From Histomonas meleagridis 2922-C6/04-290x (Eukaryota > Protista > Parabasalia): a stretch of DNA of 64,000 bases. This document shows positions 45,669 to 48,485 of the stretch, piece by piece (position 1 is the first letter of the stretch; every line of letters begins with the position of its first letter). Both the position numbers and the translations under genes were made by a program. The notes beneath the pieces are model-generated. The model was not told the DNA's origin and ran no database searches. It saw only the letters and a program-made list of their open reading frames with translations. The stretch spans positions 62,001-126,000 of the forward strand of contig JAANOX010000205.1 of the NCBI GenBank assembly GCA_020184695.1, in the 5' to 3' direction.

Positions 45669-48485
45669 TTATTGTTTAGATGGATTGTTTTTGAAGAATT
45701 CTTCCCATATTTCTGTTCCAAGTGAGAATGAATTAAGGCTTCTTACCAATTGAGAGTCACCATTGTGTAAAGTTAACCATGTTACTGGGAATTTATTTGG
45801 ATACATTTCTTTATCACCTTTCCAAGATTCAGGTATACCTTGGTCATAATAATGAATATCAACTGTTCTAATTCCAGGATAACGATTATCTGTAGTACGT
45901 AGGATTTTATCGTGGCTATCAGTATAATAAATTGTTCTAATCCAACCATCATCATCATATCTGGCACCATAAATAGATTGTGCATGTCCATTTATGAAAA
46001 AATCGATATTCCAACCAATAAATTTTTTGTTATCGAAACAATCTGTAATAAATTCATTAAATTCTTTTTTCGTAACATAATAATCTCGATTTGTCATATT
46101 AGTTAATGATATATTTTTAAATACATTTTTGAAAAATGCTCCATGTTCGTTATCACTACTACCTTGAATATACCATTTATATATATCCGTGGATAATCGA
46201 ACTTCATTTGGGAAATATTGTTTAATTTCATTAAATACTGCACTATGTTCCGCACCATCAAATGTTGAATTGGTTTTATTAGTGATATTAGGATATAATT
46301 GATAATATTTTTTGATATTTTCTTCATTATTTGCTAAGAAATGATGAATTGCATTTGAAGCATGTGCATGGCCAGACATGTGTGAATCTTTTCCTCTTGG
46401 TTGAGCTTTTTTAACATCCCACCATTTGTCTCCTTGTTGCCATGGACAAGTTAATTGATGTTCAAAATGTTTGATTCCAACCCACCTATGTTCCTTTAAT
46501 TCATTCATTCCTGACATCCATACTGTTTTTCCTTTGTATTTTTCGCTTTTTCCATCATTATTTCTGCCATTTTCAAGATAATGAGCATAAAGTTTTAAGT
46601 CAGTATTTAAAGTATTAGATGGAATACGATGACCAAGTTCATATTCTGCAGAACCACTTGGTGATTTACCCCAACCTGTTAATTTTGCATTAGTTTTTAT
46701 AATTGTGAAATTGGGTATGAATGCATCATTTTTATGATGATATGTTTTATCAACATAAAATGGTGAAATATTTCCTGAACCACCTTGCAAATCAAATGTT
46801 ACAGTATAATAATTTGTAGACCATTGTGCATACATATGAATTATTTGATCTTTAACTTTATATTCATCTAATGTGAACGGTTGATAATAGGAATATAAAA
46901 ATTGATATTGTTCTTTATTTGTTGACCAACCGATAAATGCTTTATTATCAGATGTCGTAAGTTTTGGTGGTCGCTCAAGTAAAACTTTATTAGCTGAACC
47001 TATAGTTCCAATTTGTCCTTCAATTTTTCCTTCTCCACCATTTAGATCATAAACAATTAAACATTGACCTTTTGGAATATTAAGTTTCCAACCTGCATAA
47101 AATGTCAATGATTGTGAAAAAGAAAATGGAAACTTGAAGCGTGTTTCAGGTGTACATTCAGGTGAAATATACCAACCATTAAATGTATATCCTGTATTAT
47201 GAAATGCTGAAACAAAATCATCAATAATTGCTCCAGATGAAAATGATTTTGCAGGCATTGAACCAAATCCTCCATTAGGATCGAATTTAATCATTCCATC
47301 GACTTTATATTTAATCCATTTTGCATAAACGCTAATATTTTTTATTATTATAAATGGTAATGAAATCTGTGATTCATTTCTTAGATCTATTGATGTAAAC
47401 CAACCAGCAAAAACATAATTTTCTCTTTGTGGTTGTTGTAAATTATAGATTTTAGTACCATCTAAATATTTTTCATTCATGTTTGGAGTTTTTTCATCAT
47501 TAAAATAAAAAGTTATATAATGATAAATATAGTTTTTCCAGATTGGTTTAAATGTTACATTACGAGTAAATGTATAAGGAAACACAACCTTTTGATGTTC
47601 TTCAACAGAAAGCATTTTAACAAAAGCTGTTTCATAAAATCCATCGAAATATTGATCAGATGATGGAGGATTAAATGTATTTAATATTTCAAGTACGGGT
47701 TGAGTAAATGAACATTCTAATGGGTCCATTGTTCCGTTAGCTCCATTACCTTCAAATGTAATTACTCCAGCAAATCTTGATAACTTTTCCCATTTTGGAT
47801 ATAATGTATAATCTTTATCAAATTTTGTTGGAAATTTAACAGGTTTTTTCCATTCATAATCATAATACCAACCTGTAAAAGCATACAACGTACGTCTAAA
47901 ACCATTTGGAATACTTTGAACTAAAGTTTCAGTGGTATAATGTTGTTCATTCATTATTCCAACTGCACCTAATGGATGGAAACTAATTGTAATTGTTTTA
48001 ATAGATTTATTCCATTTAGCATAAAATGTTTTATCATCTTCAAATATATATGGGAATTTTACCATAGTTGAACAATCTGGAGTATTACACCAACCATCAA
48101 AGTCATATCCATCTTTTGTGAAATTATTTGGTAAATCAGAGATAACTTGCCCGAGACTATAAGCTAGCTTGAATTGCCTACCAACAGCAGTGTTAGGATC
48201 AAAAGTTATATAATGTATATCAGGGGGGTTTGTCGGTTGAGGTACACTCGTAGGTATGCTAGATGTAAATGAAGGTGTCAATGTATTATTTATTTGGTTA
48301 TCATCAACACTATTATTGCGTGTAAGGACAACTGAAACGACTATAATAAGTATCACAGCCACTGCACCAACTGATGCTCCAATAATTAAAGGTAATTTTT
48401 CTTTTGGATTGCATTTATTTTTGTCTTCCAAAATTTTTAAAGCATCATCATTGTTAATTAACTCATCAGTTAAATTTTCCTGCAT
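45669..48485 (-). CDS. Type II membrane protein: about 7 InlB B-repeat (Flg_new) domains plus C-terminal IdeS/Mac-1 (peptidase C66)-like domain
   Basis: N-terminal TM LIIGASVGAVAVILIIVVSVVL; repeats such as ITFDPN..G...FTKDGYDFDGW; WWDVKK..GKDSHMSGHAHASNAIHHF and GHAQSIYGARYDDDGWIRTIYYTDSHD. Confidence 0.85.
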   Translation of the reverse strand: MQENLTDELINNDDALKILEDKNKCNPKEKLPLIIGASVGAVAVILIIVVSVVLTRNNSVDDNQINNTLTPSFTSSIPTSVPQPTNPPDIHYITFDPNTAVGRQFKLAYSLGQVISDLPNNFTKDGYDFDGWCNTPDCSTMVKFPYIFEDDKTFYAKWNKSIKTITISFHPLGAVGIMNEQHYTTETLVQSIPNGFRRTLYAFTGWYYDYEWKKPVKFPTKFDKDYTLYPKWEKLSRFAGVITFEGNGANGTMDPLECSFTQPVLEILNTFNPPSSDQYFDGFYETAFVKMLSVEEHQKVVFPYTFTRNVTFKPIWKNYIYHYITFYFNDEKTPNMNEKYLDGTKIYNLQQPQRENYVFAGWFTSIDLRNESQISLPFIIIKNISVYAKWIKYKVDGMIKFDPNGGFGSMPAKSFSSGAIIDDFVSAFHNTGYTFNGWYISPECTPETRFKFPFSFSQSLTFYAGWKLNIPKGQCLIVYDLNGGEGKIEGQIGTIGSANKVLLERPPKLTTSDNKAFIGWSTNKEQYQFLYSYYQPFTLDEYKVKDQIIHMYAQWSTNYYTVTFDLQGGSGNISPFYVDKTYHHKNDAFIPNFTIIKTNAKLTGWGKSPSGSAEYELGHRIPSNTLNTDLKLYAHYLENGRNNDGKSEKYKGKTVWMSGMNELKEHRWVGIKHFEHQLTCPWQQGDKWWDVKKAQPRGKDSHMSGHAHASNAIHHFLANNEENIKKYYQLYPNITNKTNSTFDGAEHSAVFNEIKQYFPNEVRLSTDIYKWYIQGSSDNEHGAFFKNVFKNISLTNMTNRDYYVTKKEFNEFITDCFDNKKFIGWNIDFFINGHAQSIYGARYDDDGWIRTIYYTDSHDKILRTTDNRYPGIRTVDIHYYDQGIPESWKGDKEMYPNKFPVTWLTLHNGDSQLVRSLNSFSLGTEIWEEFFKNNPSKQ

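What the first reader, a model, noticed from the sequence alone, without database searches (positions are those of the whole stretch)
45669..46540. Surface IdeS/Mac-1 (IgG-degrading protease) homolog with catalytic Cys changed to Ser
WWDVKKAQPRGKDSHMSGHAHASNAIHHFLANNEENIKKY aligns by eye to streptococcal IdeS GWYDITKTFNGKDDLLCGAATAGNMLHWWFDQNKDQIKRY. GHAQSIYGARYDDDGWIRTIYYTDSHD aligns to NHVINLWGADFDSNGNLKAIYVTDSD. The His and Asp region are kept, but the nucleophile codon is TCT (46374-46376), one base from TGT. The domain sits on ~7 bacterial-type InlB B-repeats with an N-terminal TM. This suggests lateral transfer from bacteria and either an immunoglobulin-binding decoy or a serine-nucleophile variant on a gut protist surface.
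Basis: partly seen in the sequence, partly recalled or inferred. Interest (0 to 1): 0.75.

Follow-up and report, generated by a model that had tools for sequence, protein, structure and literature searches.

The report
Surface IdeS-like protease copy with serine
A gut-type protist (a parabasalid) carries a small family of bacterial-origin, membrane-anchored IdeS/Mac-1-like proteases, and the copy in this window has serine in place of the catalytic cysteine, so it is most likely a protease-shaped binding protein and not an enzyme.

Summary
Window 45669-48485 (-) is one intact 938-codon gene. It encodes a short N-terminal tail, one transmembrane helix, a Ser/Thr/Pro linker, seven Flg_new (InlB B-repeat type) repeats and a C-terminal peptidase C66 (Mac-1/IdeS) domain. 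Support for the C66 domain: Pfam 39.6 bits against a cut-off of 20.3; AlphaFold pLDDT 95; the 12 best PDB matches are all C66. HMMER places Ser704 (TCT, 46374-46376) on IdeS Cys94. Lys, His and Asp are kept. The TCT is not an error: contigs from three separate studies cover it with no differences. Two full-length paralogs in the same genome have TGT (Cys). Of 158 aligned homologs, 157 have Cys; this copy alone has Ser. The catalytic helix is also remodelled (CWA to SGH, HW to HH). Ten eukaryotic sequences form one clade (100/100) among gut-bacterial homologs that already carry Flg_new fused to Mac-1, so transfer from bacteria is well supported. The donor is unresolved. Engineered Cys-to-Ser in IdeC abolishes cleavage but keeps IgG binding. 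The likeliest reading is therefore a natural pseudoprotease kept as a surface binding module. Its ligand (immunoglobulin or other) is untested. Interest is moderate: a new variant of a known family.

The parts
45669..48485 (-). Whole gene: 938 codons plus stop, no introns, no internal stops
   Evidence: ORF list. Contigs from three studies are colinear with it, with no substitutions or indels.
48494..48498 (-). TCACA, an initiator-like motif 11 nt upstream of the ATG (inferred, not tested)
   Evidence: Read from the sequence. The match to the parabasalid Inr consensus TCAYW rests on my own knowledge.
48396..48485 (-). N-terminal tail, aa 1-30, predicted cytoplasmic (Lys-rich just before the helix)
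   Evidence: Sequence and hydropathy. The topology is inferred.
48321..48395 (-). Single transmembrane helix or signal anchor, aa 31-55
   Evidence: This is the only stretch with Kyte-Doolittle mean above 1.6, peaking at 2.87. It is conserved in position in paralogs and in the metagenomic eukaryotic relatives.
48222..48320 (-). Ser/Thr/Pro/Asn-rich linker, aa 56-88
   Evidence: Sequence. Its length varies among the paralogs.
46578..48221 (-). Stalk of seven Flg_new (Listeria-Bacteroides / InlB B-repeat type) repeats, aa 89-636
   Evidence: Pfam PF09479 E 2.2e-45 with 6 stretches, and TIGR02543. The seventh repeat is seen in the paralog alignment.
45672..46577 (-). Peptidase C66 (Mac-1/IdeS) fold domain, aa 637-938
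   Evidence: Pfam PF09028 at 39.6 bits. PDB phmmer hits IdeS/Mac-1. AlphaFold2 pLDDT 95.3. The Foldseek top 12 are all C66, E 3e-16 to 6e-14, TM 0.65-0.72.
46407..46409 (-). Lys693, equivalent of IdeS Lys84 (oxyanion-hole / active-site lysine), kept
   Evidence: HMMER alignment. Invariant in the three paralogs. K in 118 and Q in 33 of the homologs.
46374..46376 (-). Ser704 codon TCT at the position of the catalytic Cys (IdeS Cys94)
   Evidence: Confirmed in contigs of three studies. Cys in 157 of 158 aligned homologs, Ser only here.
46341..46373 (-). Remodelled catalytic helix, aa 705-715 (GHAHASNAIHH). The family motif CWA..HW(W/F) becomes SGH..HH(F). At DNA level this looks like loss of TGG GCA plus a tandem CATGCA duplication.
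   Evidence: Conserved-column comparison and codon alignment with the paralogs.
45984..45986 (-). His834, equivalent of the catalytic His262, kept
   Evidence: His in 159 of 159 aligned homologs.
45918..45920 (-). Asp856, equivalent of Asp284, kept. The Asp286 position (aa 858) is His, unique in the family.

Best explanation
The gene encodes a type II (N-in, C-out) surface protein of a parabasalid protist. A stalk of seven bacterial-type Flg_new repeats holds a C-terminal peptidase C66 (IdeS/Mac-1) domain away from the membrane. The family entered a parabasalid lineage from gut bacteria as an already fused Flg_new-Mac-1 unit. It then gained a eukaryotic membrane anchor, expanded its repeats and duplicated. 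After the duplication that separated this copy from its Cys-bearing sister on contig C193, this copy lost the catalytic cysteine (TGT to TCT) and had the start of the catalytic helix remodelled. The rest of the fold and the Lys/His/Asp residues were kept. It is therefore most likely a catalytically dead pseudoprotease. It would be retained as a surface module that binds the ligand of its active sister without cleaving it, for example a host protein such as an immunoglobulin or a complement component. What is shown: the homology, the fold, the Ser, its reality in reads, its uniqueness in the family, and the bacterial affinity. What is inferred: the inactivity, the surface topology, retention by selection and the ligand.
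For: C66 membership rests on profile, PDB sequence search and fold. Ser sits at the Cys94 position, and Lys, His and Asp are kept. The TCT is covered by contigs from three studies with no differences. Both paralogs have TGT. Cys occurs in 157 of 158 aligned homologs. This copy departs from 10 of 32 strongly conserved family columns, against 4 and 5 for its paralogs, and four of the departures lie on the catalytic helix. Engineered C94S in IdeC abolishes IgG cleavage while ELISA and Biacore still show IgG binding (PMC12418751). C-to-S or C-to-A mutants were the inactive forms crystallised for IdeS, Mac-1, IdeC and T-Mac. The ORF is intact over 938 codons in a 29% GC genome. In the Mac domain, 7.4% of possible nonsynonymous single-base changes would create a stop, and the chance of staying open through 47 neutral changes is about 0.03. 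The Mac domain has 47 changes unique to this copy against 32 in the sister (p 0.11), and the stalk has 55 against 51, so there is no free decay. On origin, the ten eukaryotic rows form one clade (100/100) and this copy is sister to C193 (98/93). Bacterial relatives are Mfa_like_1 + Flg_new + Mac-1, or 3x Flg_new + Mac-1. Named bacterial relatives are gut Bacteroidales, Treponema, Mucispirillum and Akkermansia. The gene sits in a eukaryotic setting, between a KIF9-like kinesin (64% identical to Tritrichomonas foetus, 61% to Trichomonas vaginalis), an FKBP and a Rap-GAP gene.
Against: No activity or binding was measured. Inactivity is extrapolated from streptococcal enzymes only about 20% identical to this domain. 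His834, Asp856 and Lys693 are all retained, which a purely binding role does not need and which would suit a Ser-His-Asp hydrolase. The time of the Cys loss on the branch is unknown, so the intact ORF may mostly reflect selection before the loss. Transcription is not proven: the runs that look like RNA are only guessed to be RNA, and coverage is patchy and shallow. The ligand is unknown. I could not inspect model coordinates, so the Ser-His geometry was not checked.
Confidence: 0.58

Rival explanations
1. It is a gene that was disabled fairly recently and is drifting towards a pseudogene. It has no function of its own; the ORF simply has not been hit yet.
For: The family is decaying in this genome. 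The C128 copy has a TAA at codon 18, before its TM helix. C11 holds a 235-aa fragment and C141 a remnant with stops. This copy has lost more conserved positions than its paralogs, 10 against 4 and 5. Its Mac branch is somewhat longer, 0.70 against 0.53.
Against: There are 938 open codons with no frameshift, although 7.4% of nonsynonymous changes would make a stop. The rate excess over the sister is small and not significant. The fold is predicted at pLDDT 95, and the hallmark blocks YDDDGWIR, DKEMYPNK and WEEFF are intact. The catalytic-helix change involves several events, not one recent hit. Contigs from runs that are probably RNA lie on the ORF.
Confidence: 0.22
2. It is an active hydrolase that uses Ser704 with His834 and Asp856 as a serine-type triad on the papain fold, possibly with a changed substrate.
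For: Lys693, His834 and Asp856 are all kept. The residues around the Ser were changed and not merely lost: Gly follows the nucleophile, as it does in IdeS itself.
Against: The same substitution abolishes activity in IdeC (PMC12418751), and it is the standard way to inactivate C66 enzymes for crystallography. No other Ser variant exists among 158 homologs, so there is no sign of a working Ser lineage. Conserved Trp and Ala residues next to the nucleophile are lost.
Confidence: 0.1
3. The Ser is a sequencing or assembly error, or the gene lies on a bacterial contaminant contig.
For: None found.
Against: Contigs from three studies agree at the codon and across 3.1 kb. The same contig carries eukaryotic genes with parabasalid orthologs. 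GC is about 29%, like the rest of the window. Paralogs lie on three other contigs of the same genome.
Confidence: 0.01

Closest known systems
IdeS / Mac-1 of Streptococcus pyogenes (peptidase C66; PDB 1Y08, 2AU1, 2AVW, 8A47) and IdeC of S. canis (9HB1/9HB2)
   Same: It has the same fold (Foldseek E about 1e-15, TM 0.65-0.70) and passes the same Pfam family. The active-site Lys, His and Asp are in equivalent positions. The laboratory C94S mutants carry exactly the substitution seen here, and the IdeC mutant is inactive but still binds IgG.
   Different: Identity is only about 20%. The streptococcal proteins are secreted, soluble, single-domain bacterial enzymes with Cys. This one is a eukaryotic, membrane-anchored protein on a seven-repeat stalk, and its Ser is natural. 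Substrate specificity is unknown.
T-Mac (TDE0362 C-terminal domain) of Treponema denticola (PDB 9ARC, 9MDM; PMC11833123)
   Same: It is the best structural match (E 2.8e-16). Both are surface-associated multidomain proteins with Ig-like or repeat domains N-terminal to the Mac domain.
   Different: T-Mac is an active cysteine protease (Cys412/His561/Asn585) that cleaves C3, C4 and factor H but not IgG. It shows that C66 membership does not predict an immunoglobulin substrate.
Gut Bacteroidales lipoproteins with Mfa_like_1 + Flg_new + Mac-1 (P0012-P0015), and 3x Flg_new + Mac-1 (P0018)
   Same: These are the closest bacterial sequence relatives (130-160 bits to the paralog profile). They have the same Flg_new-then-Mac-1 order and the same C-terminal W-E-x-Y/F-F ending.
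   Different: They are bacterial lipoproteins with a fimbrillin-like N-terminal domain and one to three repeats. All have Cys. None is functionally characterised as far as I found.
Plasmodium SERA family (papain-like domains; SERA5 has Ser at the nucleophile, SERA6 has Cys). From my own knowledge, not tested here.
   Same: It is a parasite protist protein family on the papain fold in which some paralogs keep Cys and others carry a natural Ser and act non-enzymatically.
   Different: It belongs to a different peptidase family (C1, not C66), is not of recent bacterial origin, and is secreted into the parasitophorous vacuole instead of being membrane-anchored on a repeat stalk.
Laterally acquired bacterial surface or secreted enzymes of trichomonads (e.g. 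NlpC/P60 of Trichomonas vaginalis, PMC6299479; Listeria-Bacteroides repeat protein TVAGG3_1075670, PMC13552673)
   Same: These are precedents for parabasalids acquiring bacterial papain-superfamily enzymes and Flg_new-repeat membrane proteins.
   Different: The enzyme family is different. In the searched literature, no listed paper combined IdeS with a parabasalid, and no listed paper combined C66 with Trichomonas.

Membership tests
Peptidase family C66 (Mac-1 / IdeS), Pfam PF09028 | Profile match above the curated gathering score | tested here: met
   39.6 bits against a cut-off of 20.3, E 4.3e-10. The paralogs score 54.3 and 45.1 bits.
Peptidase family C66 (Mac-1 / IdeS), Pfam PF09028 | Papain-like two-lobe fold closest to solved C66 structures | tested here: met
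   The AlphaFold2 model has pLDDT 95.3. The 12 best Foldseek PDB hits are all C66 (E 3e-16 to 6e-14), and the next hit, staphopain, is at E 5e-3.
Peptidase family C66 (Mac-1 / IdeS), Pfam PF09028 | Catalytic cysteine (IdeS Cys94) at the N-terminus of the central helix | tested here: not met
   Ser704 (TCT) aligns with Cys94. Cys is found in 157 of 158 homologs. By descent it is a family member, but as a peptidase it would count as a non-peptidase homologue.
Peptidase family C66 (Mac-1 / IdeS), Pfam PF09028 | Catalytic His (His262), Asp/Asn (Asp284) and active-site Lys (Lys84) | tested here: met
   His834, Asp856 and Lys693 are aligned by HMMER and conserved in the family alignment.
Peptidase family C66 (Mac-1 / IdeS), Pfam PF09028 | Endopeptidase activity on immunoglobulin or another host protein | not testable with these tools
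   This needs recombinant protein and cleavage or binding assays.
Flg_new / Listeria-Bacteroides repeat (InlB B-repeat type), PF09479 | Repeated profile matches above the cut-off | tested here: met
   E 2.2e-45 with 6 stretches, and TIGR02543 at E 5e-15. Genome-wide, the repeat occurs only in this family and in one other gene on C231.
Pseudoenzyme (pseudoprotease) | Catalytic nucleophile replaced in an otherwise intact, folded homolog while active paralogs exist | tested here: met
Pseudoenzyme (pseudoprotease) | Loss of catalysis, with retention under purifying selection and expression | tested here: inconclusive
   Inactivity is inferred from IdeC C94S. The ORF is intact and the rate excess is small. 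The contigs over the ORF come from runs only guessed to be RNA.
Bacterium-to-eukaryote lateral gene transfer | Eukaryotic sequences form one clade nested among bacterial homologs, and the gene is integrated among eukaryotic genes | tested here: met
   The ten-row eukaryotic clade has 100/100 support. The metagenomic members lie beside DUSP/UCH and ankyrin genes at 33% GC. The window gene lies between kinesin, FKBP and Rap-GAP genes. The direction is inferred from hundreds of bacterial members in several phyla against one tight eukaryotic clade. The root was not inferred.
Bacterium-to-eukaryote lateral gene transfer | An identified donor lineage | tested here: inconclusive
   The sister group is a weakly supported (65/82) mix of Bacteroides, Alistipes, Barnesiella, Treponema and Mucispirillum sequences.

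The most novel reading that the evidence does not exclude
The Ser copy is a selected, expressed surface receptor that has turned a bacterial immune-evasion protease into a non-cleaving binder of host immunoglobulin or complement. It would work alongside its Cys-bearing sister as a binder and cutter pair. The unusual histidine enrichment around the former active site (14 His against 6 in the sister, five of them within 13 residues of Ser704) would give it pH- or metal-dependent ligand capture in the gut.
Probability: 0.12. Interest if true: 0.75.

Novelty: new variant of a known kind. Interest (0 to 1): 0.5.

Why it matters
C66 proteases are known as bacterial immune-evasion enzymes that cleave IgG, IgM or complement, and IdeS is a licensed drug. 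This gene belongs to a eukaryotic branch of that family. The branch was acquired from gut bacteria by a parabasalid, anchored in the membrane on a bacterial repeat stalk, and split into a canonical Cys copy and a naturally Cys-to-Ser copy. That gives a testable case of how mucosal protists borrow bacterial tools against host defences or neighbouring microbes. It also offers a natural experiment on the fate of a protease after it loses its nucleophile. The listed results of my literature searches did not connect C66 with parabasalids. The practical value is modest: it yields candidate surface antigens and possible host-interaction factors of the organism, and the collection's gene model needs correcting because it omits half of the protease domain.

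Tried and rejected
- Word-index protein searches found nothing outside this genome. The Mac region in full-length context returned only the window's own truncated model, and the domain alone returned nothing. The exhaustive profile search was therefore justified, and it found 459 relatives.
- The search for related loci with the three-paralog alignment found nothing in genome contigs or metagenome contigs.
- A 21-row mixed alignment was too diverse for pattern design. An alignment of bacterial rows only worked.
- The first AlphaFold run, with three sequences, was unusable (pLDDT 41). The run with 113 sequences gave pLDDT 95.
- Model coordinates are not exposed to scripts. I therefore could not measure the Ser-His distance, the clustering of the histidines, or the positions of Cys680 and Cys816.
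- dN/dS was not attempted. The paralogs are only 42-56% identical at protein level, so synonymous sites are saturated. I used Tajima-type unique-change counts instead, and those are underpowered.
- The species was not identified. The tools hide names for this genome, so only "parabasalid" is supported, through a neighbouring kinesin gene.
- Sequencing error and bacterial contamination were considered and rejected.
- Complex prediction was not used, because no host ligand sequence is admissible there.
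Full report
**1. What is there**

Window 45669..48485 on the minus strand is a single uninterrupted ORF of 938 codons. GC is about 29%, like the rest of the window.

Its neighbours are eukaryotic genes:
- a KIF9-like kinesin at 42517-44520
- a convergent FKBP gene at 45075-45479
- a Rap-GAP-domain gene at 48907-52449

The kinesin's closest named orthologs are from Tritrichomonas foetus (64% identity) and Trichomonas vaginalis (61%). The genome (43.1 Mb, 281 contigs) is therefore that of a parabasalid. 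I did not identify the species.

**2. Architecture**

- Pfam gives six Flg_new (Listeria-Bacteroides / InlB B-repeat type) stretches (E 2.2e-45) and a C-terminal Mac-1 (peptidase C66) match. The Mac-1 match scores 39.6 bits against a curated cut-off of 20.3. NCBIfam agrees on the repeats.
- The paralog alignment shows a seventh repeat.
- The only strongly hydrophobic stretch is aa 31-55. It follows a 30-residue tail that ends in Lys-rich sequence. The likely topology is therefore N-in, C-out, with the protease-like domain furthest from the membrane. This topology is inferred.
- A TCACA initiator-like motif lies 11 nt upstream of the ATG. The match to the parabasalid initiator consensus rests on my own knowledge.

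**3. The active site**

| Residue here | IdeS equivalent | State |
|---|---|---|
| Ser704 | Cys94 | replaced |
| Lys693 | Lys84 | kept |
| His834 | His262 | kept |
| Asp856 | Asp284 | kept |
| His858 | Asp286 | replaced |

The Ser codon is TCT at 46376-46374.

With a 113-sequence alignment, AlphaFold2 gives a confident model (pLDDT 95.3, pTM 0.93). Its 12 best Foldseek matches in the PDB are all C66 structures: T-Mac, Mac-1, IdeS and IdeC, at E 3e-16 to 6e-14 and TM 0.65-0.72. The next hit, staphopain, is at E 5e-3. The homology is beyond chance.

**4. Is the serine real?**

Contigs of four public runs were laid on 45500-48600. The codon is covered without any difference by:
- X2, which may be the source of the assembly
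- X3 record 3 and X5 record 9, from a second study
- X6 records 15 and 16, from a third study

No substitution or indel was reported anywhere in the 3.1 kb. Sequencing error is excluded.

The runs of the second and third studies are only guessed to be RNA. Their shallow, patchy contigs lie largely within the ORF. This is compatible with low-level transcription but does not prove it.

**5. Paralogs**

The genome holds two other full-length members and two fragments.

| Copy | State | Nucleophile | Evidence |
|---|---|---|---|
| C193 | intact, 959 aa | TGT (Cys) | |
| C128 | same architecture, TAA at codon 18 before the TM helix | TGT (Cys) | |
| C11 | 235-aa fragment, 60% identical to C193, ends just before the Cys | none | |
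| C141 | decayed piece with stops | none | |

Because of its early stop, the C128 copy may be a pseudogene.

- In the stalk, this copy is 56% identical to C193 and 47% to C128, so it is sister to C193. The careful tree supports this at 98/93.
- In the Mac domain it is less like C193 (42.6%) than C193 is like C128 (46.8%). It has 47 unique changes against 32 in C193 (p 0.11). The stalk has 55 against 51.
- The protease-like domain has therefore evolved somewhat faster since the duplication, but it is not decaying freely.

**6. Family-wide view**

An exhaustive profile search of 1.84 billion representatives found 459 relatives.
- Of 158 domains aligned at the nucleophile column, 157 have Cys and only this copy has Ser.
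- His is invariant (159 of 159).
- The Asp position is D, N or E.

Among 32 columns conserved at 80% or more, this copy departs at 10, against 4 for C193 and 5 for C128. Four of the departures lie on the catalytic helix: C704S, W705G, A706H and W715H.

At DNA level the helix start reads ATG TCT GGC CAT GCA CAT GCT. In C193 it reads ATG TGT TGG GCA GGC CAC GCA. This is most simply a G-to-C change in the Cys codon, loss of TGG GCA, and a tandem CATGCA duplication. That makes several events, so the change is not one fresh mutation.

The domain is also histidine-rich, with 14 His against 6 in the sister. I cannot explain this.

**7. Origin**

- The seven best non-self hits (P0004-P0010) come from ENA metagenome assemblies. 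The full-length ones have the same tail-TM-repeats-Mac layout, and all seven have Cys.
- Where DNA could be fetched, the contigs are 33-34% GC. Two of the three carry recognisably eukaryotic neighbours, DUSP/UCH and ankyrin.
- The next hits are bacterial. They include an Ornithobacterium rhinotracheale "IdeS/Mac family cysteine endopeptidase".
- They also include Bacteroidales-type lipoproteins built as Mfa_like_1 + Flg_new + Mac-1, or as three Flg_new + Mac-1.
- Named genomic relatives are gut Bacteroides, Alistipes, Phocaeicola, Barnesiella, Cryptobacteroides, Treponema, Mucispirillum and Akkermansia.
- In a maximum-likelihood tree (LG+C20 PMSF), the ten eukaryotic rows form one clade with 100/100 support. 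Their sister group is a weakly supported (65/82) mix of Bacteroidota, Treponema and Mucispirillum rows.

I infer a single acquisition of an already fused repeat-plus-protease gene from a gut bacterium. It was followed by addition of a membrane anchor, repeat expansion and duplication. The donor is unresolved and the root was not inferred.

**8. Mechanism**

- In IdeC of Streptococcus canis, the engineered C94S protein no longer cleaves feline, canine or human IgG. It still binds IgG in ELISA and Biacore (PMC12418751).
- C-to-S or C-to-A mutants are the inactive forms crystallised for IdeS (1Y08), Mac-1 (2AVW), IdeS-Fc (8A47), IdeC (9HB1/2) and T-Mac (9MDM).
- Together with the loss of conserved residues flanking the nucleophile, this makes a dead enzyme the likeliest state.
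- The intact 938-codon frame argues that the domain has been kept by selection over most of its own branch. In the Mac domain, 7.4% of nonsynonymous single-base changes would create a stop, and the chance of staying open through 47 neutral changes is about 0.03. The well-conserved fold blocks point the same way.
- This says nothing certain about the time since the Cys was lost.

I therefore favour a pseudoprotease retained as a surface binding module (about 0.58). Next come a drifting, functionless gene (about 0.22), a serine-nucleophile hydrolase (about 0.10) and an artefact (about 0.01).

What it binds is open. C66 enzymes cleave IgG (IdeS, IdeC), IgM (IdeSsuis) or complement C3, C4 and factor H but not IgG (T-Mac, PMC11833123). 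The nearest bacterial relatives are uncharacterised.

**9. Comparison and novelty**

By descent this is a member of family C66. It fails that family's defining catalytic feature, so in peptidase terms it is a non-peptidase homologue. It resembles the SERA family of Plasmodium in having Ser and Cys paralogs on a papain fold (my own knowledge). It resembles the laterally acquired NlpC/P60 enzymes of Trichomonas in origin (PMC6299479). Flg_new membrane proteins are known in T. vaginalis (PMC13552673). Searches for C66 with Trichomonas, and for IdeS with parabasalid genera or Histomonas, listed no paper linking the two.

The scan's first stage had separately noted the Cys-bearing sister on other DNA of this genome (s1-347785, 2880 letters). 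That length matches the C193 gene. I confirmed that copy's architecture and its Cys.

I rate this a new variant of a known kind, of moderate interest.

**10. Limits**

- There are no measurements of activity, binding, expression or topology.
- Model coordinates could not be inspected.
- The tree has no outgroup.
- Only the 150 best of the 459 hits could be examined. Ser variants among weaker hits, and family members hidden inside 50% clusters (for example from T. vaginalis or T. foetus), cannot be excluded.

Noticed in passing
window 45669-46239 (-), aa 750-938: The protein collection's model for this gene (P0001, 749 aa) stops at residue 749, after ...FDGAEHSA. The ORF runs on without a stop to residue 938, and contigs from three studies are colinear with it. 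The model therefore omits the His834/Asp856 half of the protease domain.
   Followed up: partly
G000:C128:304980-304982 (L007:5981-5983, minus strand): The C128 paralog (Cys-bearing) has a TAA at codon 18, between its start codon and its transmembrane helix. The collection's model (P0003, 745 aa) starts at an internal Met with no anchor. This is either a pseudogene or an assembly error; it was not checked in reads.
   Followed up: partly
L008:4583-5176 (G000:C11) and L009:3909-4174 (G000:C141): There are two family remnants. One is a 235-aa piece, 60% identical to the C193 copy, that covers the last repeats and the start of the Mac domain and ends just before the Cys. The other is a short decayed piece with four stops.
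   Followed up: partly
L010:1955-5230 (G000:C231:227954-231229, +): This is the only other gene in the genome with Flg_new repeats. It encodes 1091 aa with an N-terminal TM helix, a Sortilin/BNR (Asp-box) propeller-like region and two Flg_new repeats. It looks like another bacterial-type surface protein.
   Followed up: partly
window 45672-46577 (-), especially 46341-46382: The Mac domain is histidine-rich: 14 His against 6 in the sister paralog. Five lie within 13 residues around Ser704 (H702, H706, H708, H714, H715), and a family-unique His858 sits at the IdeS Asp286 position. Part of this comes from a tandem CATGCA duplication. It might be a metal or pH site, but I have no explanation.
   Followed up: no
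window 45075-45479 (+) and 45500-46471: A convergent FKBP-type isomerase gene ends 190 nt from this gene's stop. One contig of run X3 (2,091 nt, mean depth 161) bridges the intergenic region and the last 800 nt of this gene. If that run is RNA, the 3' ends of the two transcripts may overlap.
   Followed up: no
P0011 (Ornithobacterium rhinotracheale) and L011, L016, L020, L030 (chicken-gut MAGs): Several of the closer named bacterial relatives come from bird-associated bacteria: Ornithobacterium rhinotracheale, Candidatus Cryptobacteroides merdigallinarum, Mucispirillum faecigallinarum, Alistipes avistercoris and Phocaeicola faecipullorum. This may only reflect sampling. The tree does not resolve a donor.
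   Followed up: partly
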